Program-made: the position numbers and the translations under genes
The notes under the pieces: generated by a model
Database searches by the model: none
Told to the model about the DNA's origin: nothing
Seen by the model: only the letters and a program-made list of their open reading frames with translations
Shown here: positions 1,080 through 43,773 of the stretch, piece after piece
How the letters are laid out: every line of letters begins with the position of its first letter
Position numbering within the stretch: the stretch's first letter is position 1
IMG/VR virus record: IMGVR_UViG_3300042566_001512
Coordinates: 124,001-188,000 of that record
Direction: 5' to 3' (one strand)
Length of the DNA stretch: 64,000 bases

Positions 1080-1125
1080 TTTCAGTCACATATATCTAAG
1101 CTGAATAGAAGCAATAGTGTTTCTA
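1080..1125 (+). promoter_or_regulatory. 46-bp repeated element, copy 1 (putative phage early promoter plus 5' hairpin)
   Basis: TTTCAGTCACATATATCTAAGCTGAATAGAAGCAATAGTGTTTCTA; 45/46 identical to 43728-43773 and similar to 32068-32113. Confidence 0.65.
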
Positions 1126-1150
1126 AAATTTTATTTTTAAGGCTTTTAAA

Positions 1151-1297
1151 ATGGTCTTCCGTGTTTGCGTGTGCAAAGCACTTTCTGTGGCGCCGGCCCT
1201 AGTCTCCAGGTGCTACTACAAGCTGGGTGGGTATCGCCCAGAATCCACTATTATTGCCTGTATTGCAAGATGCGCATTTCAGTTCTTTTCGTCATAA
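1151..1297 (+). CDS. Possible 48-aa Cys-rich small protein (MVFRVCVCKALSVAPALVSRCYY...) or decayed gene
   Basis: ATG ORF read by hand; it fills the space between the repeated element and a terminator hairpin, with AAGG upstream. Confidence 0.3.
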   Translation: MVFRVCVCKALSVAPALVSRCYYKLGGYRPESTIIACIARCAFQFFSS

Positions 1298-1336
1298 ATA
1301 ATACACCCTTGGACTTTTTGTCCAAGGGTGTATTAT
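1298..1336. terminator. 17-bp hairpin between convergent units
   Basis: ATAATACACCCTTGGAC-TTTTT-GTCCAAGGGTGTATTAT followed by a T-rich tract. Confidence 0.7.
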
Positions 1337-1352
1337 GCCTTTTATTTTTTAT

Positions 1353-4079
1353 TTATAATGTTCCGGTTTGGTCTTCCGGTTCAGAATCTGGAGAGCCTTG
1401 GTCGGCCTGACCAGGTGCCACCTGTTGCTGATTTTCAGTGGTCTGTGATTGAGCTTCTAAATTGCCCTGCTGATTAACTTCTCCAAGCTGATCGGCCCCA
1501 CCTCCTAACTCGTCACCTCCACCAAATACATCACCGCCTTCGGGCTCTTCACTTGGGGGAGGCACATCCTCTGGAGGCTTAAAGCCTAGTTCGTCTGAAG
1601 CCTCTTCCATTTTTTTCTTGATGGTGTTCATTACGGCCACCGTGGGCACCATGGACCTTATAAGAGATAACAGATGAGACTCCGTATCCGCAGGCATATC
1701 TATCGATGCTCGACCTTCTTCATTTAGGCTAGTTATGTCAGCCAGCTCAGTGAGTATACCCTTTTCAGTAAGGTACTTTCGAATAAAGTGAGCTTTGTAA
1801 AGAGCCTTTAAAGTTTCAATGTTTTGCGAAAACTCGCCCATTGAATTTTCGTTTATGATCTGGTCATTCATGTACGCCAAATCAATAGCTTTGTCTACTG
1901 CCGAAGAGTACGATTCTAAATCTGTCATCTGCTGCTCAAGAGTGACAGAAGTCGGTTTAGGTAACTCAACACAAAAGTTATCGACGAAATGATTAAGTAA
2001 ATCGTTTATAACGATTTTTTCTTTTCTTTCATCGTTTATTATGTTTCCTGCGTAATCTTTTACCTCGATTTCATCCAACTCTAGTTTTTCTTTATTTTGT
2101 AAAAGAATCTCTTTTAGATCGGACATCAGAGGTTGGCTAAATCTTACGCACTTACGCAAATGGTCACTCAGTTGCGGATTAAATATTTCCTGAAGCTCAA
2201 TAATTCTTTTACTGAACAAAATGTTATTCGCTACGACCGAAGCTGCGAATTCGCTATTAAAACCATTGTCCACCATTTCAGGCGAAACGTAAGTGCCCAT
2301 TATGGAGGCTTTTCTAAGAGCGTCTTGTAGATCACTATCGGGTCTTTGTTTGTTACTCTGCACGTCTTGAAAGTCAAAAGAAACGTCTGGTACTCCAGGG
2401 TGTCCCTCAAACTTCCACTCAAAACCGGCTCTTTGAATAAAGTCGGTGATGTCGGTGACGTTGCTAACAGATAAAGGAACGCTAAGTTGCCTGCCTCTAA
2501 CTATTTCGTTTTGAGCTATCTCAATCGTCTTCATCGGATCTGGATCCCTCTCGTCTAGCTTGAGGGTTGTCATGGTTCTGCCGATGGAGTTCTTAATACT
2601 ACCTATGATGTCCGAGAACAACAGAACTATTCGTAGTGCGTTAATGGTAGCAGTATCGTCCAGTAAGCTTTGACCAATGCCGTCGTCGCCGTGCTTAAAA
2701 GCAATATAGGTCATGTAGTCAGCAGGTATATATAGCATCTGCGTTAGCTTTTTGGACAGTGTCCGCGCGAGCATTATCTCATATATCTGGTGATTGCTAG
2801 ATATGCTTACGTTCGATGACCTGATGCCATTTTTTACTCTAGTTAGTAAGTCTTTTTCAACCAGTTCCGAATATATTTGAACGCTCATCTCCAAATGTTT
2901 TACCGAGTTATTATCAAATTGAACATTTGAGCCCAAATTGCTCTTTACCCGCTGTATAATTCCGGAAGTCATAGAGCTGTTAGTGGCGCCGCCAAACCCA
3001 CTAGACAGATTGTTATAATACTGATCTCCGCCTGGTGCTTGTATAGGCACGCCTTCTTCATCTAGACACACGAAGAACCCTATTTGCTTTTCTGATTCTC
3101 CAGGTATAAAAACTGGTATTACAGATTCTGCAGGAAAGCGTTTAATTAGTGGGTTACCTATACTCTTTCTATGTAACTCGTCAGGTCTCTTCATCGCTAC
3201 GACCTGATCTCCTTTTGTTTGTTTTCTATTATACAGAGTTCTTTCGATTCTGTATTCGCTTATATTGTTGGCCCTATTAGATTCTAACGATATTTGCTTA
3301 TATGCATCGCTATATTTTTCTTTTCTGGCGGATGTGTTTATGTCGTGTATGCGCAACACCATTGGATTGTCTGTTACGTATACGTATTCGTTTTTCTCGT
3401 ATTTATCCGCAAAGACAAAACGGCAGTATCCATCTTCTTCGCTAACAGAGGTAGAGGATAGAGATTCGACGGCCAGCCCAACGTCTGGGGATCCGGTCTC
3501 TTTATAGCCACCCAATATGCCAATGGATTTAACCATCTTAGTGTTTGTATGAACAAACCCCCTCAACGACTCCATTGTTATTTTCTTTTGACCATTTATC
3601 AAATCGTCAATCACGTTTTCTGGTATAACGCAAACAGGATAACTTCCGTCTTCGGCTAGACATTTTCTTAGTATTTTTGGAAGTAAGGGTTTAATTTTAT
3701 AGACCTTAGTGAAGTGCTGCCTTATCCTTTTTAGCATCGTGGCGTTTACGTCGCTGGACAACAGTTCCTCTGGACCCAGCCAATTTAGTTCGGCTCCCGT
3801 CATGTCTGAGGGTGAAAGTATGCAGCTAGTAAGAATTCTGATGCCCAATTCTACGTCCGGAAGTAACTTAAGTACCGCGGCAGCATCTACGCTCTTCTTT
3901 GCTCTTTTAGATAGTCTGTTTCTAAATAAATGACTATTTGGTACAGTTATTTTTCTGCTACCATCGGTGTCTCTAGCTGGTCCCCTTATGTGACTATCGA
4001 CCAATTTAGAAATAGCCGCGGCTTGCTCCGGGTCGGAGTTAACCATGTTAAGTATTGGTTTACTGTTTTGCTGATTCAT
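1353..4079 (-). CDS. Portal protein (phiKZ gp129-like)
   Basis: 908 aa with acidic disordered C-tail; segments such as GSYPVCVIPE, GNPLIKRFPAESVIPV and GIGQSLLD; size and divergent position beside 728/280-aa virion genes match phiKZ-like order as recalled. Confidence 0.75.
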   Translation of the reverse strand: MNQQNSKPILNMVNSDPEQAAAISKLVDSHIRGPARDTDGSRKITVPNSHLFRNRLSKRAKKSVDAAAVLKLLPDVELGIRILTSCILSPSDMTGAELNWLGPEELLSSDVNATMLKRIRQHFTKVYKIKPLLPKILRKCLAEDGSYPVCVIPENVIDDLINGQKKITMESLRGFVHTNTKMVKSIGILGGYKETGSPDVGLAVESLSSTSVSEEDGYCRFVFADKYEKNEYVYVTDNPMVLRIHDINTSARKEKYSDAYKQISLESNRANNISEYRIERTLYNRKQTKGDQVVAMKRPDELHRKSIGNPLIKRFPAESVIPVFIPGESEKQIGFFVCLDEEGVPIQAPGGDQYYNNLSSGFGGATNSSMTSGIIQRVKSNLGSNVQFDNNSVKHLEMSVQIYSELVEKDLLTRVKNGIRSSNVSISSNHQIYEIMLARTLSKKLTQMLYIPADYMTYIAFKHGDDGIGQSLLDDTATINALRIVLLFSDIIGSIKNSIGRTMTTLKLDERDPDPMKTIEIAQNEIVRGRQLSVPLSVSNVTDITDFIQRAGFEWKFEGHPGVPDVSFDFQDVQSNKQRPDSDLQDALRKASIMGTYVSPEMVDNGFNSEFAASVVANNILFSKRIIELQEIFNPQLSDHLRKCVRFSQPLMSDLKEILLQNKEKLELDEIEVKDYAGNIINDERKEKIVINDLLNHFVDNFCVELPKPTSVTLEQQMTDLESYSSAVDKAIDLAYMNDQIINENSMGEFSQNIETLKALYKAHFIRKYLTEKGILTELADITSLNEEGRASIDMPADTESHLLSLIRSMVPTVAVMNTIKKKMEEASDELGFKPPEDVPPPSEEPEGGDVFGGGDELGGGADQLGEVNQQGNLEAQSQTTENQQQVAPGQADQGSPDSEPEDQTGTL

Positions 4080-4123
4080 CTTTTTCTCTCTTTTGATCTT
4101 GTTTTATAAAAGGTAACCGTTTT

Positions 4124-6310
4124 ATGGTCAATAACTATTATCAAATTTATCTAAATAGCGTGTTTGACCTGGCGAATACGATATCTATAAAGTTTCACCA
4201 GGCCGCAGAGGCAATAAACAACAAAGTCATGATAGATTACGGTTACCAATCCGTAGATCTTGACGACCCCACAAGCTGGAAGTATTATCAAAATATAAGC
4301 GGCTCGTATCATTTCAGCAATAAAATAATGGAAATAACCTCACTGGATACATTGGAGGTTATACAGTTTAGTAAGGATATTCTTGAGCACCATCCGGCCA
4401 CGTTAAAGGCCTACCAGTACGGAACTAGGTATTACAAAGAACTGTTATACAAGTACCCTCAAGAAGAAATGCTAATAAGAGGTATACTCTATCCGTGCGA
4501 CCTGCAAACGGCAGTATCGGCCAAAGACGCCACTATACTTAGCTACCCCAAATATTTAGTGGACGAAAATGAATATAGTTTTATTACGAATCTGCAGGAC
4601 TGGATTTATGATTATTATACAAGGTGGGTGAATAAACAATACACTATCTCTCACGACCTTTACGTTGCCGCGTATATGGGTCAGTTATATATGCATTTAG
4701 TTCCTGCGATTATAAACATACGACTAAATGCTTGTAAGAGCAGTGAGGCACACGGGTTTCATGTGCGACAATATCTCGCCAGCCACGGTATGTTGGATAA
4801 GTACTTAAGCACAATGACTAAGAGCCAGGCGCTTTTCTTGTATAGAAACATAGACTACATCGAGGCAAATGCCGGTAAACGACTGGTGTTTGATTGGTTA
4901 GTGGAAAACGTAATGACTGTTAGAGGTCTGCCCCTGTACGAGTACGACGCAAAACACGACCTGTCTAACATGGTTCCTAGCGAAGACAACGGGTTTTCTA
5001 GTCAAGACAGACCCAACGTGATATTCAGGCGACTACCCATAAACTACCCTACAATAGACCCAAAGAGAAATACGTACGGGTTAAGCGATATATTCGATAA
5101 GATACAAGAAGAAGCAGTGGGTAATTTGGAATACCAGACAAACAATGCCTCTCCTATACTTAACGAACTAATAGACTCCGATTCAAACGTAATACCGACA
5201 AAACTTATAGAATCGGCTATTAAAGACTACTCCGACTCTGTTCCTTACAGACTGGAAGATATTCTATTAAACGAATGGCTTCACATGTCAAGTACCGGAA
5301 GGTTCACCGCATACGTGACCATAGAGTTTCCTATAAGTAAAGAAACTAGCACCATAAATGTAAAGGAAGCGTTCATTCTTTACATCTACTGTGTTCTGAA
5401 GGTGATGAATTTTAATCCTTTAAGCCTTCCTAAAGTAATAGCAAGTAGAGTATACAAGGATCAAAAGCCTACGCTGGAATGGATGTATTCTTATTTTTCA
5501 GGAAGCCATCTAAGTAAACAGCAGATACAGTCTGTTTTTTTAAACAACCCGCCTACTACAGGCGTTTCTTCGATAGATTCCTTTTACCAGAGAGCAAACG
5601 ATATCTATAAATTAACTCTGCAACACTATTACGCAGAGGCTAGAAATGAGCACTTTATAGAAACCGGTGAGTTAAAGGTTGCTAATAGCCAACTATTTAT
5701 GGATAAGATTATTCAACTGGAGTCCGAAACTGGACATACGTTATATTCGGATTGGCTAAGTTCTTACAGCTATGATTTATCCGGATACGCAGCAAACGAT
5801 TATCTGGATTTAGCAAACGTTATCTACGGTGCCGCCACAGGTGCACTTGCTAACAAACAACTAAGTATTAAAGAGATACAAAATGCAATGGTTAGTTTGT
5901 TTAAACAACTCTCTAGCTACTCAATTCAAATAGTAACCGACATAAACGAATCGGGAATATACCTAGTACCAGACGGCGGGGTTAAGACGGGCGATAGGTC
6001 AGACATAGATCAATCGCAAGAGCTGGTAGAAAATTCTATAATTGGAGTAAATAGCAACAAAGGAAACGAAAAATCCAATTACTTGCTAGATATGAATAAT
6101 TTATATTCTTTCGGTCAAATTAACTCCGCAGACAGCGACAGAGTGAACATAGATTATACATCTGAAAACGCCGTGTTTACAAAAGTAGATGAGTTTAGTA
6201 TGATGAACGTAGAATGTGCAGTAATACGCGCAAGCGGTGCTGACTTTACAGTTGACTATGAATCTTTAACCCCGGAGCAAAAGCTAGAGCTTTTTGAATT
6301 GAACATTTAA
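4124..6310 (+). CDS. Conserved virion structural protein (phiKZ gp128-like)
   Basis: 728 aa; SWKYYQNISGSYH, ITSLDTLEVI and QALFLYRNIDYI segments; synteny with portal. Confidence 0.65.
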   Translation: MVNNYYQIYLNSVFDLANTISIKFHQAAEAINNKVMIDYGYQSVDLDDPTSWKYYQNISGSYHFSNKIMEITSLDTLEVIQFSKDILEHHPATLKAYQYGTRYYKELLYKYPQEEMLIRGILYPCDLQTAVSAKDATILSYPKYLVDENEYSFITNLQDWIYDYYTRWVNKQYTISHDLYVAAYMGQLYMHLVPAIINIRLNACKSSEAHGFHVRQYLASHGMLDKYLSTMTKSQALFLYRNIDYIEANAGKRLVFDWLVENVMTVRGLPLYEYDAKHDLSNMVPSEDNGFSSQDRPNVIFRRLPINYPTIDPKRNTYGLSDIFDKIQEEAVGNLEYQTNNASPILNELIDSDSNVIPTKLIESAIKDYSDSVPYRLEDILLNEWLHMSSTGRFTAYVTIEFPISKETSTINVKEAFILYIYCVLKVMNFNPLSLPKVIASRVYKDQKPTLEWMYSYFSGSHLSKQQIQSVFLNNPPTTGVSSIDSFYQRANDIYKLTLQHYYAEARNEHFIETGELKVANSQLFMDKIIQLESETGHTLYSDWLSSYSYDLSGYAANDYLDLANVIYGAATGALANKQLSIKEIQNAMVSLFKQLSSYSIQIVTDINESGIYLVPDGGVKTGDRSDIDQSQELVENSIIGVNSNKGNEKSNYLLDMNNLYSFGQINSADSDRVNIDYTSENAVFTKVDEFSMMNVECAVIRASGADFTVDYESLTPEQKLELFELNI

Positions 6311-6373
6311 TAATTCATAAAGTGAATAGTGTGATTTGCCCAACAAATAACAGTTTTTTAATTGAGGAACTAA

Positions 6374-7216
6374 ATGGAACATGTAACTCGTACAGTGTAT
6401 GGGTCTTATCTACAGACCTGTTTGAAATTGCGAATTCCGCACACAATCCAGGAATACACTACCCTAAACGAAAAACTAGGGATTCAGTCTGGAATATACC
6501 CGTCCCCAGGTGTATATCCATCGACTAAGTATTTCTGCATCGGAAACAAAGGGCATACTAGCCAGATAGGTGCCGACGGAATCGGCTTAAACGTAGCTGC
6601 GCAGCACAGGGCCACAGATGCGGCACTGTTTAACCAAATACCTTTTGTTTTAAGAGAGGTAACGAACGATCTTACCACTGCTGAGCGCGCAAACTACGCA
6701 CTGCGCAGAGAAGAGCAGCATAACGGATCTTCATACGTGGCGTACTACCTTCGCAGGATAGACATGACGGGCGTCGAGGCCGAAATGCAATATAGGACAA
6801 ACGTAAACGGCAACATCGTAGTTACGCCCTTTGTTCCAACCGCAGATAATCTTAACCCTTCGCCAGTTAGTATACCTAGCGAAGGATCTGGAACAGTATC
6901 TGGCGACTATGTTACAGTTACTGCGGAAATAGACATAAGTTTGTCAGCCTGGGAAGTAGCAGAGTTACTGAATGTGGCTGAAATACTTTACGGAGACACC
7001 AGCTACGCGATTATTTCAGAAATAGGTTTGTGTTCTGGTTTAGATAAAGCCGTTTCCGTCACCCCTAGCGTAGGCGCCCCTTTTAACTTTAATGAAGCTA
7101 TAGGTGTACAAATTAGCTCTCATATTGCAGTGATGAACTTGGTCAAGTACTCCAATAGTGGAGTCACTAGAATACTTGGCCTGGGTACAAATGATCCATT
7201 ATTTAATATTTTCTAA
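6374..7216 (+). CDS. Virion structural protein (phiKZ gp127-like, probable baseplate)
   Basis: 280 aa with GAGG RBS; TTLNEKLGI, YFCIGNKGH, IPFVLR and AIISEIGLCSG segments; synteny. Confidence 0.65.
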   Translation: MEHVTRTVYGSYLQTCLKLRIPHTIQEYTTLNEKLGIQSGIYPSPGVYPSTKYFCIGNKGHTSQIGADGIGLNVAAQHRATDAALFNQIPFVLREVTNDLTTAERANYALRREEQHNGSSYVAYYLRRIDMTGVEAEMQYRTNVNGNIVVTPFVPTADNLNPSPVSIPSEGSGTVSGDYVTVTAEIDISLSAWEVAELLNVAEILYGDTSYAIISEIGLCSGLDKAVSVTPSVGAPFNFNEAIGVQISSHIAVMNLVKYSNSGVTRILGLGTNDPLFNIF

Positions 7217-7249
7217 AACAGTATATGTAATGGGTAACTAAACAGACCC

Positions 7250-7308
7250 CATAATCCCAATTACACTCTGAGGTGGTTTTTCTGCCTTGGTTTGTAGTTG
7301 GGATTATG
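7250..7308. terminator. Long interrupted hairpin (CATA...TATG family)
   Basis: CATAATCCCAATTACA ... TGTAGTTGGGATTATG arms. Confidence 0.55.
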
Positions 7309-7397
7309 CCGTATTATTTTTTAAATTGGTAAATAAAATACAATACTGTGCCTAGTGCCTTTTTGGCAACTTTAAACAACAGAATAACATTTTAAAT

Positions 7398-7985
7398 ATG
7401 CTACCTTACCCATTAGATAAAAATGCACAAGCGTGCATAGTGGGGATAGACCCCGGATCAGAAACCCTTGGGGTTTGCATTTTGTATTTTAACGTTGTTA
7501 CTATACAGGTAACCGAAATAATAACAAACACTTACATAGGAAGCAAGCTACCGATTAGCCCAATGCTGTCATTAATGCACGGAGATAGGGTGTCTAGGAT
7601 AGCCGCTCACCAGCTCAATTTAATTAATATATACAGACAGCATAATCCGGTGGCCGTGGTATCGGAAGCCCCCTTCTATAACCCTAGGAGGCCAAATGCT
7701 TTTGGCGCATTAGTTGAAGTTATCTGCGCGATAAGAAATAGCGTAATAAATTACAGCGATACAATGTGTCTTTATCAGATAGATCCGGCCAGCGTTAAAC
7801 GAGCCATTGGCGCTAAAGGAAACGCAGACAAGGACGTAGTAAAGCAGCACATCGGTTTAATACCAGAAATAGTGAATAATTTAAAAATCCCATTAAATTT
7901 ACTAGACGAGCATTCGATAGATGCCACCGCAGTAGCTTATCATCATCTTCTTTCATACCGAAACAACCAACTTAACTTTATTTAA
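7398..7985 (+). CDS. ruvC: RuvC-like Holliday junction resolvase
   Basis: IVGIDPGSETLG, VVSEAPF, VKRAIGAKGNADKDVV and DEHSIDATAVA match RuvC catalytic motifs. Confidence 0.88.
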   Translation: MLPYPLDKNAQACIVGIDPGSETLGVCILYFNVVTIQVTEIITNTYIGSKLPISPMLSLMHGDRVSRIAAHQLNLINIYRQHNPVAVVSEAPFYNPRRPNAFGALVEVICAIRNSVINYSDTMCLYQIDPASVKRAIGAKGNADKDVVKQHIGLIPEIVNNLKIPLNLLDEHSIDATAVAYHHLLSYRNNQLNFI

Positions 7986-7995
7986 AGGATAGAAA

Positions 7996-8505
7996 ATGTT
8001 TGACTTCCCTCTCATGGTGTTGACCAGTTTTTTTAAGTCACTAATGGCTAAGTTTTCTAAACCAAAAACACGGATAACTGGTTTATTCGTTGCACTTATT
8101 TTAGGTTACGGCGTTTACTTAGCCGTCGGCTTAGTTAAGAATGTTTTTTCTAATGAAGAAAAAAGCCTGATTGAAAGCAGAGAACAGATTGCTCAGCAGC
8201 AAGAGCAAATAAAATCGCAGCAGTTAATAATTGAAGAGATGAGAAAAAGTATAGAACAGCTAAAGGCTTCTAATGAATTGACTCTGTCCATAGTAAAAGA
8301 ACTTAATTCCGAACAAAAGAAAATAGAAATTAATGTTAAAAATACTAAAAAATGGATAGACAAGTCACTCGCCCAGGTAGATTCGCTAGACATTTCTGAT
8401 CAAGAGAAAGAAAAGAAAAGAAGCCAGGTACTTATAAAAGGACTAAATCAAACTTATTGTCAGCTTTTCGAAAATTCATGCGTGGCCAACGGAGTAAATA
8501 AATGA
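7996..8505 (+). CDS. Putative inner-membrane spanin (Rz-like)
   Basis: One N-terminal TM helix, long coiled coil, C-terminal Cys pair; overlaps a downstream lipoprotein gene. Confidence 0.6.
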   Translation: MFDFPLMVLTSFFKSLMAKFSKPKTRITGLFVALILGYGVYLAVGLVKNVFSNEEKSLIESREQIAQQQEQIKSQQLIIEEMRKSIEQLKASNELTLSIVKELNSEQKKIEINVKNTKKWIDKSLAQVDSLDISDQEKEKKRSQVLIKGLNQTYCQLFENSCVANGVNK

Positions 8506-12558: not shown

Positions 12559-12594
12559 CATATAGTCCCTGGAACACGTTCCAGGGACTATATG
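12559..12594. terminator. 17-bp hairpin (CATA...TATG family)
   Basis: CATATAGTCCCTGGAAC-AC-GTTCCAGGGACTATATG. Confidence 0.7.
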
Positions 12595-32013: not shown

Positions 32014-32048
32014 TCATAATAGCCCTGGTATTACCAGGGCTATTATGA
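32014..32048. terminator. 17-bp hairpin (CATA...TATG family)
   Basis: TCATAATAGCCCTGGTA-T-TACCAGGGCTATTATGA. Confidence 0.68.
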
Positions 32049-32067
32049 TTTAAATCCTATTATATTT

Positions 32068-32113
32068 TTTCAGTCACATATACCTGACTCACATAGAAAC
32101 AATATTGTTTCTA
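32068..32113 (+). promoter_or_regulatory. 46-bp repeated element, copy 2
   Basis: TTTCAGTCACATATACCTGACTCACATAGAAACAATATTGTTTCTA; same length and ends as copies 1 and 3. Confidence 0.6.
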
Positions 32114-32709
32114 ATCCCATTCGCTAATACGGCACGAAAGGATCCACCGTGCTCAATTTCCAAAACCCTGGCACAGAACATTGTAAAAGTTATAGAGGTC
32201 ATCATTGTCGTCAAGATCATCGAGGTGATCAATCGGCAACAATGATTCACGATGACTGGTTAGTTAAATATTAGTCGAATTTAACTATACTGAACGTTAA
32301 CGTAGATGGTCTATGCTGAATAAATTCAGCATTGTTCTTTTCATTATCATCTTAATTTCAGCACTGGTGTTTTATGTAAGTCTATTCTTTTACATATACT
32401 TATAACGAAATACTAACTGTGACATCGTGTCTATACGACCCAATATGAATTTACTTCTCATCTCCATCGTAATCGTGTACCTGGTATAGGATCTCGGTAC
32501 TTGTCTTATGGCAAAAAACGAATACCGTGCCGGGCGGTACAATCTGGATTAATATATTTCATCCGTATTCTGGGCCAAAGTACCCGTCATTAACACACTA
32601 ATGCCGGTCCTCGGAGCCACGATGTGCATGATCTATCGATTGTCTTTCGGTGTGGAAGAATAAGCGGAGCCGACGCTCTTGCCTAAATAGTAACATGATT
32701 GGATAAGAG

Positions 32710-32760
32710 CACACTCCGTGGATAATTCCACGGAGTGTGTGTCTTTTTCTTTTCTTTTTC
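32710..32760 (+). terminator. Intrinsic terminator
   Basis: CACACTCCGTGGA-TAAT-TCCACGGAGTGTG followed by a T-rich tract. Confidence 0.72.
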
Positions 32761-32810: not shown

Positions 32811-33437
32811 TTAAGGAATCGTGATGCTGTTTTTAATAAACGTTTCCAGCACTTGTATTTTTTGATATAAATCAGCCGTAATGCTTTCCAGTTGAGATAC
32901 TCGCAATCTACTGGATACATTGTTTGTAATGTTTGTTATTCGTGCCTGCTCTACTGCCGCGTGCTCTTCTTGCGTTAGTATACTGGGCTCGGCATAAACG
33001 ACTTCTTTTATCTCTGAACGAACGCCAATGTAGTTGAACACCACGTCCGATATTTCTTGTTTTAAGTCAGAAATGTCTAAATCGTCAGGTATGGCCGATA
33101 AAGATATTCCTAGCATTACAATCCTGTAAGGTACGCCATTTGCGTCAGGTATGGCTTCTATGTATATTTCAGGTACTGATATTATCTCACCAATCGCCGA
33201 TTCAAACGTAATTATTCTAACACCGGCATCGGAGTCTGAATCGAACTGGGCTTGGGTCAGGCCTGCCGGCTCATACACGTCGGAAAAGGGATCGTCTCCT
33301 TTTGCAACTAAACCATTTATAGTCTCCACTCCAATACACTGTTGTATTAGTCTAGGGTTTATTTGTGTGTCGAAAGGTGCTGTTGCCAACACGACGCCTT
33401 TCATGCCAACAGTAACGTTTATTCTTTGTACCGACAT
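32811..33437 (-). CDS. Conserved phiKZ-like hypothetical/virion protein
   Basis: 208 aa; VPEIYIEAIP..NGVPY and LSAIPDDLD segments; C-terminal coiled coil. Confidence 0.55.
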   Translation of the reverse strand: MSVQRINVTVGMKGVVLATAPFDTQINPRLIQQCIGVETINGLVAKGDDPFSDVYEPAGLTQAQFDSDSDAGVRIITFESAIGEIISVPEIYIEAIPDANGVPYRIVMLGISLSAIPDDLDISDLKQEISDVVFNYIGVRSEIKEVVYAEPSILTQEEHAAVEQARITNITNNVSSRLRVSQLESITADLYQKIQVLETFIKNSITIP

Positions 33438-33452: not shown

Positions 33453-34775
33453 TTAATCGTAAAGAGGCGTAGTCAATTTACTAGATACAAGCAATTCGAT
33501 ATTCATGTATCTTGTACTAATGAAAACAATGCCGTATCTCTGTACCTTTCTATAACCGATGGGTATATCTGCATTATAGGTTAAATTCTCGGCTATCAAT
33601 ATCATTTGCGTTAGGCGAGTGAGCAGTCCCTGTGTCTGAGAAGACATCCGGTTGTAATCTACGCTGGTAGAAGAAACATTTATTATATCCGGATATATCT
33701 GAGTAATATCAAATAGATTTTCACGATTCTCGTATCCACCAATAACCAGCAGGGCCAGAGACTTATATGGGTGCGGCATTATGCTGGCGTGTGACTGCAC
33801 AAAAGATCCAGCGTAACCCGTCTCGGGTGTTAGTATGGACTTAAGATAATCTATTTCTTTGTCTGCATAAATTACCGGTGAATATATTCCCGATTGTAAA
33901 ACCATATTAGGTATTGCATAGTTGTGCCATCTAGGGAAGAATATAAATTCGGTTCTTTTAAATATATCTGGAAATATTGCTCTCCATTCAGATTCACTTC
34001 TGTTAGTGTTATTTAGAATGTATGCCGCAATTGCTTCCCTTATGACGTCGTTATCGTTCCCGTTAAGACCATATACCAAAATAGACCAGTTAGTATTTAT
34101 TAGATTTGCGCCGTTAACGGGATCTACCCAGTTAAAAGATACGCCGACCAACGCAGTCTCTGGATCGTCACCCCTGGCTACCTGAATATAGTTAAATCTT
34201 TCTGAATGTGTTACATTGCTCACCAACATCTGAACGTTGGCAGCAGTGCTAAAAAAAGAGTCTATGTTCTCAATTGGAGGGACGACTACTATCTCGTAGT
34301 TATCGTACTTCTGTCTGAAGCTTTGATCGCTAAGCCATATAGTGGTAATATTGTCTTCGTCCAGGTAGCTTCTAGTCTTCCAACTTATCCACTCTGGGAA
34401 CTGTTTGCCATTTGATGCGTTTACCAGGCTACCGCATTCCATTGAGTCGCATTCTTCTGCAAAATTGGTGGCCAACGACAATAGAAACTGTTGGGTGTTC
34501 TCTATAGTAGTACTTGCCAATTGTCTAGTGTACACCCAGTCCAATATAGAGTGACCTATAGAAACTATAGACGGTACCGGGTCTATTTCTTCGGTAACGT
34601 CACTGGTGCTGCTAAACGTATAAATAGTTATATATGAATTTAAATTAGAAGGATATACCTTCTTGTCTTTACTAAAAGTGGCACTATAGATCGATAGCTC
34701 CCCAATAGGAGCAACAACGCCACTAACGTTACTAACCAGTGTCTCTATGCTAGCAAACCCTTTTAACTGGTACAT
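33453..34775 (-). CDS. Conserved virion structural protein
   Basis: 440 aa; MYQLKGF, APIGELS, YEIVVVPPI and IFPDIFKRTEF..PRW segments recalled from phiKZ-like structural proteins. Confidence 0.6.
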   Translation of the reverse strand: MYQLKGFASIETLVSNVSGVVAPIGELSIYSATFSKDKKVYPSNLNSYITIYTFSSTSDVTEEIDPVPSIVSIGHSILDWVYTRQLASTTIENTQQFLLSLATNFAEECDSMECGSLVNASNGKQFPEWISWKTRSYLDEDNITTIWLSDQSFRQKYDNYEIVVVPPIENIDSFFSTAANVQMLVSNVTHSERFNYIQVARGDDPETALVGVSFNWVDPVNGANLINTNWSILVYGLNGNDNDVIREAIAAYILNNTNRSESEWRAIFPDIFKRTEFIFFPRWHNYAIPNMVLQSGIYSPVIYADKEIDYLKSILTPETGYAGSFVQSHASIMPHPYKSLALLVIGGYENRENLFDITQIYPDIINVSSTSVDYNRMSSQTQGLLTRLTQMILIAENLTYNADIPIGYRKVQRYGIVFISTRYMNIELLVSSKLTTPLYD

Positions 34776-37329: not shown

Positions 37330-37758
37330 GTGAATCGCACAAATGCCACCACAGACAACCGAGCAATACAATACATAGTTAATAGACTACCGTCTCACCT
37401 AAAGCGCATCATTTTCCTAGCCAGTATCACTGCCGTAGCAAAGAACTTAAAAGAACCCGACGACGAGTTCATAGGTAAGCTTAATGATTTAATGCAATTA
37501 TCGAACACCGGAAACAACGCACTTAAATTACCAATTTACATTAACAAACTAATCTGGAGTCACAGGGAGTGCATTCAAGAAGAGCTAAACGTGCTCACTA
37601 GTTCCACCTGCGACCCGCAATCCCGTCAACATTGCGTAGACAGAATAAACAGCTTCACCCCTTCCTGGCTTAAATACGCCGACCAAGACACAATCATCGG
37701 AGACCTCAATAGATTGTTTCAAAAGGAAAACAGTCTATTTACTCACACTACAGTATAA
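37330..37758 (+). CDS. Hypothetical protein
   Basis: 142 aa, AGGA RBS before GTG. Confidence 0.6.
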   Translation: MNRTNATTDNRAIQYIVNRLPSHLKRIIFLASITAVAKNLKEPDDEFIGKLNDLMQLSNTGNNALKLPIYINKLIWSHRECIQEELNVLTSSTCDPQSRQHCVDRINSFTPSWLKYADQDTIIGDLNRLFQKENSLFTHTTV

Positions 37759-37768: not shown

Positions 37769-37801
37769 CATATAGCCCCGGATTTTTTCCGGGGCTATAT
37801 G
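37769..37801. terminator. 14-bp hairpin between convergent genes (CATA...TATG family)
   Basis: CATATAGCCCCGGA-TTTTT-TCCGGGGCTATATG. Confidence 0.72.
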
Positions 37802-37804
37802 GCA

Positions 37805-38653
37805 TCAACCGAATATTTCAGTAATTTTATTTACCGTATTATCAATTGCTGAGCTTAGTCCCAGCGCGCGATAGTAGGTATTGCTAAAGTATTCCATTTC
37901 CTTTGCCACCTGATAAGCGCCTAAGGACAGCCTTTCTGCGGCTTCCGGTCTGGTCTTGGCTCCGTTTCTTTTTATGTTGTCTGCTATTAAAGCTAGATAA
38001 TTAACGCAATGATCTATCTCTTTCTTAAGGGCGTTTCTGTCCACAGATTGAAAGTTATCTATCACTGCTTTTTGCTTCAGTATCACATCCGACCAGTCCG
38101 AATTACGTTGTACTACCTCACCAACCGCGGTTTCGGTTTTGTATGAATCGGCTTTATATAGCGAAGTAAATTTTTCTATTCTTTTGTCTCGTGCTTCTTC
38201 GAGTTTTGAATATTCGAATCTTTTTGATTCTGCTGATAGTGCGGTGTCAGCGTTCGAAAGAAAGCTAGCCAGATATAGGGAGTAAGGAGAAACAACATGT
38301 GCATATAAACCTTTGGCGTATTCGCTGGACTCCAATAGAGCATCTAGCATTGTTAAATATGTGCAATTCATGCCCTCAGGCTTGTAAGCACGCAACTGAC
38401 GAACCTCTGTAAAGGGTATATTGTTTACTAAATCCAGAAATTTCTTGTTTTCTTTGGTAAAAGGCGTTGCCTGTGCGCTGGTATGAAAACCTCGCAATTG
38501 TAAATAATCGCCAGTGTTTCTAAACGCGTTAAAAATATTATTAACAAACAAACCGAAATCACCAACAAAGCCCTCTTGGGCTATTGACTCGATGCTCAGT
38601 TGTCTGCTTAGTATACTCAGGGTAGAGATATCTACTTCTCTGCTTTTTGTCAT
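37805..38653 (-). CDS. Internal head (ejection) protein, phiKZ gp153-like
   Basis: Helical 282 aa; N-terminal SIE/AQE prohead-protease-type sites (LSIESIAQEGF); position between RNase H and UvsX. Confidence 0.55.
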   Translation of the reverse strand: MTKSREVDISTLSILSRQLSIESIAQEGFVGDFGLFVNNIFNAFRNTGDYLQLRGFHTSAQATPFTKENKKFLDLVNNIPFTEVRQLRAYKPEGMNCTYLTMLDALLESSEYAKGLYAHVVSPYSLYLASFLSNADTALSAESKRFEYSKLEEARDKRIEKFTSLYKADSYKTETAVGEVVQRNSDWSDVILKQKAVIDNFQSVDRNALKKEIDHCVNYLALIADNIKRNGAKTRPEAAERLSLGAYQVAKEMEYFSNTYYRALGLSSAIDNTVNKITEIFG

Positions 38654-41103: not shown

Positions 41104-41160
41104 TGACAGATAGTTAGCATAAGAAAAACTCAATCAATTGGAATATCGAAAGAATTAAAA

Positions 41161-41478: not shown

Positions 41479-41485
41479 TAAAAAA

Positions 41486-42049
41486 ATGTATTTCAAAATA
41501 AATACAACCATGAAGTCCCAGGTGCCAGCAACCTTTAACATGGGAAATTTATTTTATAATTTAAAAGGTTCCGATCAGCGGCTGCTGAGTATAGTAAAGT
41601 TTATTAAAAGTAAAAATATATTGGACTACAGAATAACGGCTAAGGAAGATATAAATAAATGTGGCAGCTTTTGCGATATAAGTTTAGATTTGGTATATTT
41701 ACTTTTTGACTCTATAAACTTCCATCAGTTATTTGATTTAGAAAAAGAATCCGATATCTTGGATGCCAAGATAGCCGTTTATAACGATCTGGTTTCGCAT
41801 TATAAATTTGATCTTATTCAAGAATATCAAGATTCAAAAGTCAATAGTAGAGAAGATTATAACTTTAAGATTTCAGTGTTCTTAAAGCCCCTGATTTTTA
41901 GATGCATTAAACTACACGTCGCATCCTCTCCCTATAATACCGAACAAGAGGGAGTATATAGCTTTTGGGAAATGGTAGACCACTATATATTTGTGAATAA
42001 AACTTCTCATCACCTAAAATCGCTAAAAACCTTCCAAGCGAATAAGTGA
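41486..42049 (+). CDS. Hypothetical protein
   Basis: 187 aa AT-rich ORF. Confidence 0.55.
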   Translation: MYFKINTTMKSQVPATFNMGNLFYNLKGSDQRLLSIVKFIKSKNILDYRITAKEDINKCGSFCDISLDLVYLLFDSINFHQLFDLEKESDILDAKIAVYNDLVSHYKFDLIQEYQDSKVNSREDYNFKISVFLKPLIFRCIKLHVASSPYNTEQEGVYSFWEMVDHYIFVNKTSHHLKSLKTFQANK

Positions 42050-42075
42050 AAATAAGATAATAAAAAAGGATTAAT

Positions 42076-42738
42076 ATGTCTAATAGACAGCAAACAGAAA
42101 ACTTCATAATTGAATATATATCAAAATTGACAGGGCCTGTAAACGTTGGCCTTTATAAAAATAAATTTTCTAAAATGTCAGATGAAGAGTTTGACTCTTT
42201 TATGCGAGATTTGAGAGACAAAAAACAAAGACTGTGTGTCATTGATGCTAACTTTGGTCCAGAGAGACTGAGCGTAAAAAACAACATACAAGTCGCAAAA
42301 GAACTAGGAAAATCATTATTTCAGAGAGTGTGGGTAACTCAAGAACCCGGAAAGCCTTCTTATCTTACCCCCAACGAATACATAGTGACTATAATGCCTT
42401 TGAGAAGGCAGGCCCAGCTACTGTCAAAAAAGGTATCTATACCAGAAGACAATAATTCGGTTGATGATTTTACTGGTCAGCCAACTGGTAAATCAAAGGG
42501 TAGTAAAATATCCTATCCCGAGACACAGGTACTTGCGTCTTTTGGTTTAAACAACTCTATTACTGAGCTTCTAAAGTATAGAGGGGGTGACGAGCGAGGC
42601 TTTGCCGCCATGAACACCATGATAGATCGCACCGGCCAAGTAAATCTAAAAACCATTGAACCTTATGCGGGCGGAGTAAAGTCTACCCAAACACTAAAGA
42701 GCCTCATGACGGCGATGCACTTTAATGTCACAATTTAA
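42076..42738 (+). CDS. rpoB: Virion RNA polymerase beta-like C-terminal subunit (phiKZ gp149-like)
   Basis: PLRRQAQLLSKK, DDFTGQPTGKSKGSKISYPETQVL and ELLKYRGGD correspond to RpoB C-terminal motifs. Confidence 0.82.
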   Translation: MSNRQQTENFIIEYISKLTGPVNVGLYKNKFSKMSDEEFDSFMRDLRDKKQRLCVIDANFGPERLSVKNNIQVAKELGKSLFQRVWVTQEPGKPSYLTPNEYIVTIMPLRRQAQLLSKKVSIPEDNNSVDDFTGQPTGKSKGSKISYPETQVLASFGLNNSITELLKYRGGDERGFAAMNTMIDRTGQVNLKTIEPYAGGVKSTQTLKSLMTAMHFNVTI

Positions 42739-42746
42739 AACTAAAA

Positions 42747-42796
42747 ATATATCGCACCGAAAGCGGCATTTCGGTGCGATATATGATTTTTTTCTT
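42747..42796 (+). terminator. Intrinsic terminator
   Basis: ATATATCGCACCGAAA-GCGGCA-TTTCGGTGCGATATAT followed by a T tract. Confidence 0.7.
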
Positions 42797-42826
42797 TTAC
42801 ACGATATTTTTAAGGAGTAAATCAAC

Positions 42827-43642
42827 ATGAAAACGTACGGATTAAACGACAGCGGCCCAGAAGTGTTACGGCTTCAAAGATATATGAACGAGGTGTTTTT
42901 GGCCGATAATCGCCCCGACGGTGTTCTGGGTAAAGTGACACAGGCCACGCTTAAAAGACTGCAAATTAAATTAGGTATCGTTGAAGACGATGAAAGCGGT
43001 CCTTGTTACGGACCCGTTACACAAAGCAAAGTCCTTGACTTCATAAACAAGAAATATTTAACAGAAGAAGATTTTCAAAGAGCATCCGTGAAATCTGGGT
43101 TAGAGGTAAACATAGTAAAAGCGGTAACTGAAGTGGAGGCTGTTCAGTTCGGCTTTTTCAGCACCGGGGCTCCGGTGGTTCTGTTTGAGAGGCACCACTT
43201 CTACAGACTAGTGCGCAACTTAAAAGGAACCCCTTTTGCAAACAAACTGTCAATTGACAATCCGGACATTTGCTCGCCAGAACCGGGAGGGTACGTAGGC
43301 GGGAAAAGAGAATTACTGAGGCTAAATAAAGCCAGAGCCATAGACGATGAAGCCGCATTAAAATCTGCATCGTACGGGCTATTCCAAATAATGGGGTTTA
43401 ACCACGAGCAAGCCGGCTACGACACCGTTAGAAAATACTACAATGCAATGTGTCAAAGCGAAGACAACCAGTTGGATGCCTTTGTTAATTATCTAATTTC
43501 AGACAAAGATAAAACGCTTATTACCAGTCTAAAGAAAAAAGACTTTGCTTCGTTTGCAAGGGAGTATAACGGCTCTGCATACAAGAAAAATAATTACGAC
43601 GTTAAAATTCTTAACGCTTATAATAAATTATCTAGTGTTTAA
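42827..43642 (+). CDS. Modular endolysin: peptidoglycan-binding domain plus N-acetylmuramidase (DUF3380-type)
   Basis: GPEVLRLQ...DGVLGKVT..TLKRLQ binding domain; AVTEVE, LFERHHF, SASYGLFQIMGFN and FAREYNG catalytic motifs. Confidence 0.9.
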   Translation: MKTYGLNDSGPEVLRLQRYMNEVFLADNRPDGVLGKVTQATLKRLQIKLGIVEDDESGPCYGPVTQSKVLDFINKKYLTEEDFQRASVKSGLEVNIVKAVTEVEAVQFGFFSTGAPVVLFERHHFYRLVRNLKGTPFANKLSIDNPDICSPEPGGYVGGKRELLRLNKARAIDDEAALKSASYGLFQIMGFNHEQAGYDTVRKYYNAMCQSEDNQLDAFVNYLISDKDKTLITSLKKKDFASFAREYNGSAYKKNNYDVKILNAYNKLSSV

Positions 43643-43660
43643 ATATTCAATTTAATTAAA

Positions 43661-43712
43661 ATATACAGTCATAAATGGGTACCTGCCACGGTACCCATTT
43701 ATGACTGTATAT
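43661..43712. terminator. 23-bp hairpin (CATA...TATG family)
   Basis: ATATACAGTCATAAATGGGTACC-TGCCAC-GGTACCCATTTATGACTGTATAT. Confidence 0.72.
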
Positions 43713-43727
43713 ACCGATTCCAAATAA

Positions 43728-43773
43728 TTTCAGTCACATATATCTAAGGTGAATAGAAGCAATAGTGTTTCTA
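43728..43773 (+). promoter_or_regulatory. 46-bp repeated element, copy 3
   Basis: TTTCAGTCACATATATCTAAGGTGAATAGAAGCAATAGTGTTTCTA. Confidence 0.65.

What the first reader, a model, noticed from the sequence alone, without database searches (positions are those of the whole stretch)
1080..43773. 46-bp promoter-plus-hairpin element in three copies, each heading a tiny or decayed cassette
Seen: copies at 1080, 32068 and 43728 have the same length; copies 1 and 3 differ by 1 nt. The 3' part is a hairpin kept despite substitutions (TAGAAGCA-ATAG-TGTTTCTA versus the palindrome TAGAAACAATATTGTTTCTA). Each lies 15-22 nt after a CATA...TATG hairpin and is followed by 170-600 nt and another terminator. 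The cargo is a 48-aa ORF, an ORF-poor stretch and a frameshifted ORF. Known: phiKZ early promoters are AT-rich conserved motifs read by virion RNAP. Inference: self-contained early expression slots inserted among late genes, with homology that could allow cargo exchange.
Basis: partly seen in the sequence, partly recalled or inferred. Interest (0 to 1): 0.6.

Follow-up and report, generated by a model that had tools for sequence, protein, structure and literature searches.

The report
Early promoter with 5' leader hairpin
The three 46-bp repeats are copies of this giant phage's own promoter joined to a hairpin that probably forms at the very start of the RNA; the module heads short, fast-changing gene units and resembles elements known from other phages.

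Summary
Three 46-bp copies lie at window 1080, 32068 and 43728. Each sits 15-22 nt after a palindromic hairpin and 172-596 nt before an intrinsic terminator.

The window belongs to a 209-kb phiKZ-like jumbo phage that has PhuZ and split RNA polymerase genes. The 5' half, TTTCAGTCACATATA-N7-TGA, is a clade-wide, strictly one-stranded promoter motif. A weight matrix built only from relatives finds 21-22 sites in this genome, all on the + strand. These sites precede PhuZ, RNAP beta, DNA polymerase, ligase and orphan genes, and never virion genes. I therefore read it as the early, virion-RNAP-type promoter class.

The 3' half is a stem-loop that starts at or next to the inferred start site. It is kept by compensatory and G-U changes. 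It is more stable on the sense strand in 53 of 61 unique instances, which points to a 5'-terminal RNA hairpin.

Hairpin-bearing copies head short units bounded by terminators. Closer relatives show the same module with a different first gene, or whole units present or absent.

The cassette idea is partly supported and resembles the PeSLs of T4-like phages. The "frameshifted ORF" and "decayed" claims are not supported. No RNA data could be obtained.

The parts
1023..1057 (.). Upstream perfect palindromic hairpin (CATAATAGCCC...GGGCTATTATG). It belongs to the genome-wide CATA...TATG hairpin family and probably ends or insulates upstream transcription.
1069..1104 (+). Promoter, copy 1: A/T-rich upstream part, invariant core TTTCAGTCACATATA (1080-1094), 7-nt spacer, and conserved TGA (1102-1104) where transcription is inferred to start.
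   Evidence: PWM 40.9 bits
1106..1125 (+). Leader hairpin, copy 1: 8-bp stem with one G-U pair and loop AUAG. Energy is -6.9 kcal/mol on the + strand and -2.5 on the - strand.
1151..1297 (+). 48-aa ORF, the only ORF of cargo 1. Its codon log-odds score looks like a spurious ORF (-0.18). It has no Pfam or Rfam match and no significant interior fold. It may be a non-coding RNA of about 240 nt.
1298..1336 (.). 17-bp intrinsic terminator that closes unit 1. It is palindromic and also lies at the 3' end of the convergent portal gene (1353-4079, -).
32014..32048 (.). Upstream palindromic hairpin of copy 2 (TCATAATAGCCC...GGGCTATTATGA). It has the same stem family as the hairpin at 1023-1057, with one compensatory pair.
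32057..32092 (+). Promoter, copy 2: exact core at 32070-32082, but the spacer differs and TGA is replaced by CAC. It is the weakest of the three (PWM 21.1 bits).
32094..32113 (+). Leader hairpin, copy 2: a perfect 20-nt palindrome with A-U where other copies have G-U or G-C. Energy is -7.1 kcal/mol.
32114..32708 (+). ORF-poor cargo 2. The largest + strand ORFs are 46, 41 and 30 aa, none coding-like. There is no Rfam hit, the interior fold z-score is -1.3, and no homologue was found. A weak terminator-like site at 32313-32332 could end a shorter RNA of about 250 nt.
32709..32740 (.). Intrinsic terminator that closes unit 2. It lies at the 3' end of the convergent virion-gene operon (32811-33437 and 33453-34775, -).
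43661..43712 (.). 23-bp palindromic hairpin after the endolysin gene (42827-43642). It is conserved, with a compensatory change, in relative L178.
43714..43752 (+). Promoter, copy 3: CCGATTCCAAATAA, then the core (43728/43730-43742), then TGA (43750-43752). It is 100% identical over 62 bp to genome copies 38128 and 196598 (PWM 44.8 bits).
43754..43773 (+). Leader hairpin, copy 3: identical to the copy 1 hairpin. Energy is -8.2 kcal/mol on the + strand and -3.3 on the - strand.
43800..44030 (+). ORF A, 76 aa, with a hydrophobic N-terminus. It is an orphan: the word search of 5.8 billion clusters found only itself. Its codon score is borderline.
44027..44128 (+). ORF B, 33 aa, clearly coding-like. 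Its start overlaps the stop of ORF A in ATGA, which fits translational coupling rather than a demonstrated frameshift.
44132..44168 (+). Intrinsic terminator (17-bp stem plus T-run) that closes unit 3.

Best explanation
The 46-bp repeat is a two-part expression module of a phiKZ-like jumbo phage.

Part 1, shown by sequence statistics. This is the phage clade's own promoter: an A/T-rich upstream element, the invariant core TTTCAGTCACATATA, 7 nt, and a conserved TGA. By analogy with phiKZ, phiR1-37 and AR9, the virion-packaged multisubunit RNA polymerase is inferred to read it early in infection and to start at or next to the TGA.

Part 2, where selection is shown and function is inferred. The first 25 nt or so of the transcript fold into an 8-11-bp stem-loop that leaves 0-4 unpaired 5' nucleotides. 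I propose that it shields the 5' end of early messages from 5'-end-dependent decay. Because each phage lineage keeps its own "house" hairpin sequence, it may also be bound by a lineage-specific factor.

Unit layout. The module usually sits 15-45 nt after a palindromic hairpin and is followed by a leader of about 50 nt with a Shine-Dalgarno site. One or a few small orphan ORFs follow (some units have no convincing ORF), and then an intrinsic terminator. This gives insulated units of 0.25-1.1 kb that can sit between convergent genes.

Turnover. The conserved 60-95 bp (hairpin, promoter, leader hairpin) gives homology at which units are gained, lost or given new cargo. The outcome is shown by comparison with relatives. 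The recombination mechanism is inferred.
For: Promoter, within the genome:
- The exact core occurs 7 times and near-exact copies 4 more times, all on the + strand.
- A PWM built only from relatives gives 21 sites of at least 10 bits on the + strand and 0 on the - strand.

Promoter, across relatives:
- Five distant jumbo contigs (portal 31-41% identical) carry 4-11 copies each, always on one strand. The reversed-pattern control gives 0-1.
- The logo shows conserved positions outside the search pattern (A at -8, T at -12, A of the TGA).

Promoter class:
- Downstream genes are PhuZ, RNAP beta fragments, DNA polymerase, NAD ligase, a DHH phosphoesterase and orphan ORFs, and never virion genes.
- The element is not sigma-70-like.
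- The literature says jumbo phages with their own RNAPs have a conserved motif upstream of early operons, with the start site about 6 nt downstream (PMC7598289; PMC5312081).

Hairpin:
- In 61 unique instances, the 36 nt starting at the TGA fold at a mean of -6.55 kcal/mol, against -4.37 for the reverse complement.
- The sense strand is the more stable in 53 of 61 (Wilcoxon p = 2e-7), with mean z of -1.76 against shuffles.
- 57 chance matches show no such asymmetry.
- Among the 42 instances that fold at -5 kcal/mol or better, the stem starts at the U of UGA in 28.
- Within this genome one pair is G-U (4), G-C (2) or A-U (1), two pairs changed on both sides, and 94.6% of cells pair.
- AR9 early leaders show no such fold, so it is not a by-product of this promoter type.

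Units:
- Terminators flank all three window units.
- Across the clade the median first ORF is about 100 aa, and the median distance to the next 9-bp or longer hairpin is about 395 nt.
- In this genome, promoters with a hairpin head ORFs of 35-124 aa, and promoters without one head long conserved operons.

Turnover:
- L178 shares endolysin end, hairpin, promoter and leader hairpin with copy 3. The module is about 95% identical against about 73% in the coding flank, yet an unrelated ORF starts at the ATG.
- L177 has a promoter-headed 72-aa unit plus a 467-aa gene where this genome has only the hairpin at 37769-37801.
- L175 has two units that this genome lacks, each headed by the same repeat of about 95 bp of hairpin plus promoter.
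Against:
- The core is not purely AT-rich, unlike the published phiKZ and AR9 early motifs.
- Only about 22 sites were found in 76% of a genome, and some downstream genes (PhuZ, polymerase, ligase) could equally be middle genes.
- Copy 2 lacks the TGA.
- The instances in the strand-asymmetry test are not phylogenetically independent.
- G-T pairs are also tolerated in single-stranded DNA, so a hairpin on the non-template DNA strand is not excluded.
- The stabiliser function is an analogy only.
- The right-hand end of the replaced cargo could not be seen, because L178 is 1.4 kb long. Homologous exchange at the module therefore remains unproven.
Confidence: 0.65

Rival explanations
1. The palindromic 3' half is a double-stranded DNA operator for a dimeric phage repressor or activator that overlaps the start site, for example to shut off early genes. 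On this view it is not an RNA structure.
For: - Copy 2 is a perfect 20-bp palindrome.
- The "house" hairpin sequence is identical (22 of 22) in relatives whose coding DNA is only about 70-75% identical. That suggests sequence-specific recognition.
Against: - Four of the copies break the DNA palindrome with a G-T pair, which is a mismatch on the other strand.
- Genome copy 78014 replaces half the stem on both sides.
- Across the clade the sequence is free while pairing is kept, and the sense strand is favoured in 53 of 61 instances.
Confidence: 0.1
2. The motif is a middle or late promoter read by the non-virion RNAP, or by host RNAP, not an early virion-RNAP promoter.
For: - No expression data exist.
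- Several downstream genes (DNA polymerase, ligase, PhuZ) are replication-phase genes.
- The core is less AT-rich than the published early motifs.
Against: - Published middle and late motifs of phiKZ are weak or four bases long, whereas strong 13-15-nt motifs are the hallmark of early promoters.
- No site precedes a virion gene.
- The element has no sigma-70 hexamer pair.
Confidence: 0.15
3. The hairpin is a promoter-proximal attenuator or pause site that yields very short 5' RNAs, like the premature 5'UTR termination seen in phiKZ and 201phi2-1. On this view it is not a stabiliser.
For: - 5'UTR termination and 5'UTR-derived small RNAs are documented in phiKZ and 201phi2-1.
- Some copies have U-rich sequence after the stem.
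Against: - The stems are short and AU-rich (-7 to -10 kcal/mol).
- They start at about +1 to +5, so the product would be only about 25-30 nt.
- There is no consistent U-tract across the clade.
- Shine-Dalgarno sites and coding-like ORFs follow at a fixed distance of about 50 nt.
Confidence: 0.1
4. The repeats are remnants of a small mobile DNA element (MITE-like, or a homing footprint) with no regulatory role, spread by transposition.
For: - Several copies are near-identical, at 62-83 bp.
- Units are present or absent between relatives.
Against: - There are no terminal inverted repeats or target duplications at the homology edges.
- All copies lie on one strand, in intergenic positions about 50 nt upstream of start codons.
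- The core is conserved in phages whose portal proteins are only 31-41% identical.
Confidence: 0.04

Closest known systems
Early promoters of phiKZ-type jumbo phages (phiKZ, phiR1-37, AR9), read by the virion multisubunit RNAP (PMC7598289, PMC5312081, PMC8244752)
   Same: - A highly conserved motif of over 10 nt can be found by over-representation.
- It lies on the coding strand upstream of non-structural and orphan operons, with tens of copies per genome.
- A conserved initiating position sits a fixed 6-8 nt downstream (AR9: motif-6N-G; here: motif-7N-TGA).
- The phage has split RNAP beta and beta' genes and PhuZ.
   Different: - The sequence is different and not purely AT-rich (TCAGTCAC before ATATA).
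- It is absent from the nearest cultured relatives FLC9, RP12, Xoo-sp14 and RSF1.
- It is followed by a selected 5' stem-loop, which AR9 early leaders lack.
- The papers read here on phiKZ and 201phi2-1 do not mention such a stem-loop.
- Timing and polymerase are untested here.
PeSLs (promoter-early stem-loops), the mobile regulatory cassettes of T4-like phages (PMC2839356, PMC4122927)
   Same: - Both are composite repeats of about 60-100 bp with a stem-loop next to a strong early promoter.
- They lie upstream of small orphan ORFs.
- They occur also as isolated copies inside conserved modules.
- Related phages differ by insertion, deletion or replacement of the ORFs behind them.
- Crossover zones lie between the promoter and the ATG, which is where the L178 and copy 3 homology ends.
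   Different: - PeSL promoters are sigma-70-like and read by host RNAP; this one is not.
- PeSLs are about 50 per genome and clustered in hyperplastic regions; here there are about 22, scattered.
- The second, transcribed hairpin downstream of the promoter has no PeSL counterpart.
- No mini-circles or recombinants were observed here.
5'-terminal stabiliser stem-loops of bacterial and phage mRNAs (E. coli ompA leader, T7 phi10 leader). This comparison rests on my own knowledge and was not checked in the library.
   Same: A stem-loop with no more than a few unpaired nucleotides at the extreme 5' end of the message, placed well upstream of the Shine-Dalgarno site.
   Different: Here the hairpin is a family-wide feature fused to one promoter class, with lineage-specific "house" sequences. 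Its effect on RNA decay is untested.
Hairpin promoters of phage N4 virion RNAP (PMC4496689)
   Same: An early promoter of a virion-carried RNAP, associated with a short hairpin of 5-8 bp and a small loop.
   Different: - The N4 hairpin is a DNA structure inside the promoter, upstream of the start site, and is read by a single-subunit RNAP.
- Here the hairpin lies downstream of the conserved motif and of the inferred start.
- G-U pairs favour the sense strand, which points to RNA.

Membership tests
phiKZ-type jumbo-phage early (virion-RNAP) promoters | A highly conserved, over-represented motif of about 10-15 nt upstream of operons. | tested here: met
   There are 7 exact and 4 near-exact cores. 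The PWM finds 21-22 sites, against 0-1 on the opposite strand. In the logo, 15 positions carry about 1.6 bits or more each.
phiKZ-type jumbo-phage early (virion-RNAP) promoters | The motif is AT-rich. | tested here: inconclusive
   The 3' half (ACATATA) and the upstream region are AT-rich. The invariant TCAGTCAC is not.
phiKZ-type jumbo-phage early (virion-RNAP) promoters | The motif is centred near -10, with the transcription start about 6 nt downstream. | not testable with these tools
A conserved TGA 7 nt after the core (A in 89% of instances) fits the rule but is not a mapped start.
phiKZ-type jumbo-phage early (virion-RNAP) promoters | It precedes early or non-structural genes, and the phage encodes its own multisubunit RNAPs. 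| tested here: met
   PhuZ, RNAP beta, DNA polymerase, ligase and orphan ORFs lie downstream, and no virion genes do. Four RNAP beta-type fragments were found.
phiKZ-type jumbo-phage early (virion-RNAP) promoters | Transcription within minutes of infection, independent of new protein synthesis. | not testable with these tools
   The phage is uncultured, from a metagenome record, and no expression data were reachable.
PeSL mobile regulatory cassettes (T4-like phages) | A conserved composite of a stem-loop terminator and an adjacent early promoter, within about 100 bp. | tested here: met
   A palindromic hairpin lies 18-46 nt upstream of 13 of the 22 promoters. The two modules in L175 share about 95 bp of hairpin plus promoter.
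PeSL mobile regulatory cassettes (T4-like phages) | A sigma-70-like promoter read by host RNAP. | tested here: not met
   No sigma-70-type hexamer pair coincides with the element in any of the three copies. The invariant block does not match the -35 or -10 consensus.
PeSL mobile regulatory cassettes (T4-like phages) | Associated with orphan ORFs, and with insertions, deletions or replacements between close relatives. | tested here: met
   The cargo ORFs have no Pfam domain or homologue. L178, L177 and L175 differ from this genome exactly at such units.
PeSL mobile regulatory cassettes (T4-like phages) | Recombination between copies is demonstrated (mini-circles or chimeric elements). | not testable with these tools
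5'-terminal mRNA stabiliser stem-loops | A stem-loop at the extreme 5' end with few unpaired nucleotides. | tested here: inconclusive
   Of the 42 instances that fold at -5 kcal/mol or better, the stem starts at the U of the conserved UGA in 28, and within 6 nt in the rest. The 5' end itself is not mapped.
5'-terminal mRNA stabiliser stem-loops | It prolongs mRNA half-life. | not testable with these tools
   This needs an experiment.

The most novel reading that the evidence does not exclude
A whole clade of uncultured nucleus-forming jumbo phages fuses its virion-RNAP promoter to a lineage-specific 5'-terminal RNA hairpin. The hairpin is a recognition tag for a phage factor, for example for selective stabilisation, translation or routing of the first messages. 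The promoter-hairpin module doubles as a portable recombination site that drives the turnover of small early genes, many of them tiny membrane peptides. That would make it a PeSL-like system invented independently for a phage-encoded polymerase.
Probability: 0.2. Interest if true: 0.75.

Novelty: new variant of a known kind. Interest (0 to 1): 0.5.

Why it matters
- It gives a ready-made, testable promoter model for an uncultured branch of phiKZ-like phages: a PWM and an inferred start site. That allows early genes to be predicted from sequence alone in many metagenomic jumbo contigs.
- The obligatory 5' stem-loop, with "house" sequences that differ between lineages, is not described for phiKZ or 201phi2-1 in the papers read here, and a fold test found none in AR9 early leaders. 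It suggests a post-transcriptional layer, either stability or recognition, on the very first messages of these phages.
- The comparison with closer relatives shows that small early units are exchanged at these modules. That extends the PeSL idea of regulatory cassettes as engines of orphan-gene turnover from T4-like phages to phages that use their own polymerase.
- The short strong promoter, leader and terminator parts could also serve as orthogonal expression parts, if the polymerase is characterised.

Tried and rejected
RNA evidence

Searches for relatives or other copies that found nothing
- Megablast of window 1-8000 against cultured phages gave no match.
- The search for related loci with the SbcC-like protein found no relatives in IMG/VR.
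- The motif is at background level in the cultured phages FLC9, RP12, Xoo-sp14 and RSF1.
- The full promoter-plus-house-hairpin pattern gave 0 hits in IMG/VR and 0 in metagenome contigs. Only the hairpin alone found relatives. One of those 4 hits, L176, is a chance match.
- The promoter PWM gave no site near the portal genes of G001-G005 or of the cultured relatives, so the position of copy 1 is not conserved at that distance.

Cargo as a known or structured RNA
- There are no tRNAs, no Rfam family at gathering score, and only chance-level E-value hits.
- Interior fold z-scores are -0.22 and -1.28. The strong z-scores of the whole units come from the two terminal hairpins.

Cargo as a conserved or decayed gene
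- ORF A finds only itself.
- tblastx of all cargos against the genome and against all fetched relatives gives only self hits.
- There are no Pfam domains.

Frameshift in cargo 3
- Frame-wise codon scores give no coding signal in the frame-3 extension upstream of ORF B.
- The second contig with the same 76-aa protein has the same gene layout.

Relocated cargo
- The L175 180-aa ORF against the genome's 201-aa ORF behind copy 196598 looked promising by tblastn.
- With composition correction, only a 26-residue C-terminal membrane tail matches, at E = 0.009. I treat it as a lead only.

phiKZ comparison
- No supplementary table of phiKZ early promoters is held.
- The region upstream of PHIKZ001 gave no usable motif.
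- phiKZ leaders were therefore not tested. Only AR9 leaders were.

Full report
**1.

- The three 46-bp copies are at window 1080-1125, 32068-32113 and 43728-43773. Copies 1 and 3 differ at one base.
- The core TCAGTCACATATA is exact at all three.
- The 20-nt hairpin pattern occurs only there, against 0.09 matches expected from shuffles.
- Each copy lies 22, 19 or 15 nt after a perfect palindromic hairpin (1023-1057, 32014-32048, 43661-43712).
- Each is followed after 172, 596 or 358 nt by a canonical stem plus T-run terminator (1298-1336, 32709-32740, 44132-44168).

**2. Where this is**

- The window is bases 124001-188000 of a 208,807-bp IMG/VR virus record, 41% G+C and estimated 76% complete.
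- It is a phiKZ-like jumbo phage:
  - The portal gene (1353-4079, - strand) is 37% identical to that of Burkholderia phage FLC9, and hundreds of phiKZ-type phages match it.
  - There is a PhuZ tubulin.
  - There are at least four split RNA polymerase beta-type genes.
- The neighbours of the three copies are mixed:
  - Copy 1 lies between the last gene of a DNA polymerase operon and the convergent portal gene.
  - Copy 2 lies between an SbcC-like nuclease gene and convergent virion genes.
  - Copy 3 lies between an RNAP fragment plus endolysin and orphan ORFs.

**3. The 5' half is a clade-wide, one-stranded promoter motif**

- Genome-wide, the exact core occurs 7 times and near-exact copies 4 more times, all on the + strand although genes lie on both strands.
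- An exact-match scan of IMG/VR found the 15-mer in 110 stretches. Many lie in other jumbo contigs that carry several copies.
- In five such records (portal only 31-41% identical to this phage), the core with at most 1 mismatch occurs 4-11 times, always on one strand. The reversed-pattern control gives 0-1.
- The logo from 61 unique instances extends beyond the search pattern. It has an upstream A-T-Y-n-T-A-r-A block, TT before the core, and 7 nt after the core a TGA. The TG was my selection criterion, but the A is present in 89% without selection.
- A PWM built only from relatives finds 21 sites of at least 10 bits on the + strand of this genome and none on the - strand.
- These sites precede PhuZ, RNAP beta fragments, a DNA polymerase operon, NAD-dependent ligase, a DHH phosphoesterase followed by a helicase, and many orphan ORFs. 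None precedes a virion gene.
- The element is not sigma-70-like.
- It is at background level in the nearest cultured phages.
- The literature states that every jumbo phage with its own RNAPs has a conserved motif upstream of early operons, centred near -10, with the start about 6 nt downstream. In AR9 the form is motif-6N-G.
- I therefore read this as the early, virion-RNAP promoter of an uncultured phiKZ-like clade, with the start at or next to the TGA. The class and the start site are inferences.

**4. The 3' half is a selected hairpin on the sense strand**

Within this genome:
- The full element occurs six times (genome 38128, 97079, 125082, 156070, 167730, 196598).
- Diverged versions occur at 78014 and 84628.
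- One stem pair is G-U in four copies, G-C in two and A-U in one.
- Copy 78014 changes two neighbouring pairs on both sides.
- 94.6% of cells pair, against 26-52% when the partner columns are slid.

Across the clade:
- The hairpin sequence is free but the fold is kept.
- The 36 nt starting at the TGA fold at a mean of -6.55 kcal/mol (z = -1.76 against shuffles), against -4.37 for the reverse complement.
- The sense strand is the more stable in 53 of 61 instances (Wilcoxon p = 2e-7).
- 57 chance occurrences of the same 13-mer show no asymmetry.
- Among the 42 instances that fold at -5 kcal/mol or better, the stem begins at the U of UGA in 28 and within 6 nt in the rest.
- The three window hairpins fold at -6.9, -7.1 and -8.2 kcal/mol on the + strand, and at -2.5, -7.1 and -3.3 on the - strand.

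This pattern fits an RNA stem-loop at the very 5' end of the transcript. A hairpin on the non-template DNA strand is not excluded.

Each lineage keeps a "house" hairpin:
- In G001, G002, G005 and two other contig sets, the copies within a genome resemble each other.
- The house hairpin of this phage is 22 of 22 identical in three metagenome contigs whose coding DNA is only about 70-75% identical.
- So the sequence, not only the pairing, is under constraint within a lineage.

AR9 early leaders have no such fold (mean -1.3 kcal/mol, z = -0.08).

**5. What the module heads**

- The leader is about 50 nt long and ends in a Shine-Dalgarno site.
- In this genome, promoters with a strong leader hairpin head first ORFs of 35-124 aa and reach a terminator after 117-1100 nt. 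The one exception is 84628, an 81-aa first ORF with no 10-bp hairpin for about 5 kb.
- Weaker sites without a hairpin head the long conserved operons.
- Clade-wide, the median first ORF is about 100 aa and the next 9-bp or longer hairpin is a median of 395 nt away.
- Several cargos are single-pass membrane peptides of 33-47 aa with clearly coding-like codon usage.
- The window cargos are the least convincing:
  - The 48-aa ORF of unit 1 scores like a spurious ORF.
  - Unit 2 has no coding-like ORF.
  - Neither unit has an Rfam match or a significant interior fold.
  - They may be short non-coding RNAs, micro-peptide genes or remnants. I cannot tell which.
- Unit 3 holds a 76-aa orphan ORF and a coding-like 33-aa ORF that overlap in ATGA. 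Frame-wise codon scores do not support a frameshift.
- The upstream CATA...TATG hairpins are not specific to the element. The genome has 80 perfect hairpins of 10 bp or more, against 0-3 in shuffles. Most sit at gene ends, and many have the same stem base. Conserved terminator motifs are known in phiKZ and 201phi2-1.

**6. Turnover in closer relatives**

- L178:
  - It is collinear with the end of the endolysin gene, the hairpin (with a compensatory change) and the promoter-hairpin of copy 3.
  - Homology is about 95% over the module, against about 73% in the coding flank.
  - Homology fades in the leader, and the ORF that starts at the ATG is unrelated.
- L177:
  - It is collinear with window 34.5-38.1 kb.
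  - Between the homologues of ORFs 37330-37758 and 37805-38653 it carries hairpin, promoter, house hairpin, a 72-aa ORF and a terminator, plus a 467-aa gene.
  - This genome has only the hairpin at 37769-37801 there.
- L175:
  - It is collinear with genome 66.3-72.7 kb.
  - It has two promoter-headed units that are absent here.
  - Both are preceded by the same repeat of about 95 bp of hairpin plus promoter.
- Within this genome:
  - Copies 38128, 167730 and 196598 are identical over 62 bp.
  - Copies 38128 and 196598 are identical over 83 bp, up to the ribosome-binding site. Homology ends sharply on both sides.

These facts fit exchange at the module, but they do not prove the mechanism.

**7. 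Comparison with what is known**

- As a promoter, this is a new sequence variant of the jumbo-phage early-promoter kind.
- As a composite repeat tied to orphan-gene turnover, it works like the PeSLs of T4-like phages. It fails the PeSL feature of a sigma-70-like promoter, so it is an analogue, not a member.
- The transcribed 5' hairpin recalls the ompA and T7 phi10 stabiliser stem-loops (my own knowledge).
- It differs from the N4 promoter hairpins, which lie upstream of the start site and act as DNA.

**8. Limits**

- No RNA data were available.
- The instances in the statistical tests are related to each other.
- phiKZ itself was not tested for leader hairpins.
- The relatives are short contigs.

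Noticed in passing
window 62190-62494 and 62597-62910 (+), after ORF 60714-62186: Two tandem full-length group I introns (Rfam RF00028, 83.6 and 88.8 bits) directly follow a 490-aa RNA polymerase beta-type ORF (phrog_2986). The polymerase gene is probably split by two introns.
   Followed up: partly
whole genome; in the window e.g. 507-539, 12559-12594, 37769-37801, 51370-51426: There are 80 perfect hairpins with stems of 10-27 bp, against 0-3 in shuffled genomes, and 23 of them lie in the window. Most sit at gene ends, 53 start with (C)ATA, and at least 25 are CATA...TATG palindromes. This looks like a conserved family of (bidirectional) terminators. The 3' arm ends in TATG, the late-promoter and start-site tetranucleotide of phiKZ, so a dual terminator and late-promoter role is conceivable but untested.
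   Followed up: partly
window 540-1022: A second ORF-poor stretch of about 480 nt lies between two palindromic hairpins, just upstream of unit 1. It has no ORF of 50 aa or more, no promoter of the studied class, and several small internal hairpins.
   Followed up: no
genome 38200-38343, 38602-38745, 196670-196777, 197562-197675 (L165, L169); L178 748-870 and 922-1047: Small single-pass membrane peptides of 33-47 aa, coding-like by codon log-odds, recur behind the strongest promoter-hairpin copies in this phage and in relative L178. They may form a family of early membrane micro-proteins.
   Followed up: partly
L177 315-1718, L175 4860-6413; genome 59.1-63.7 kb and 69.4-69.9 kb: A 467-517-aa gene is present next to promoter units in two relatives but absent at the matching sites here. 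It belongs to a family with at least five weakly similar paralogues clustered in this genome.
   Followed up: no
window 32313-32332: A weak terminator-like hairpin with a T-run lies inside cargo 2. It overlaps the start of a 30-aa hydrophobic ORF and could end the unit 2 transcript after about 250 nt, similar in size to unit 1.
   Followed up: no
L178 1108-1419; L067, L017/L029, L144/L146: A conserved small protein family sharing a W-x-N-G-T-G-Y motif recurs in several clade members. In L067 it is the first ORF behind the promoter. No homologue was detected in this genome.
   Followed up: no
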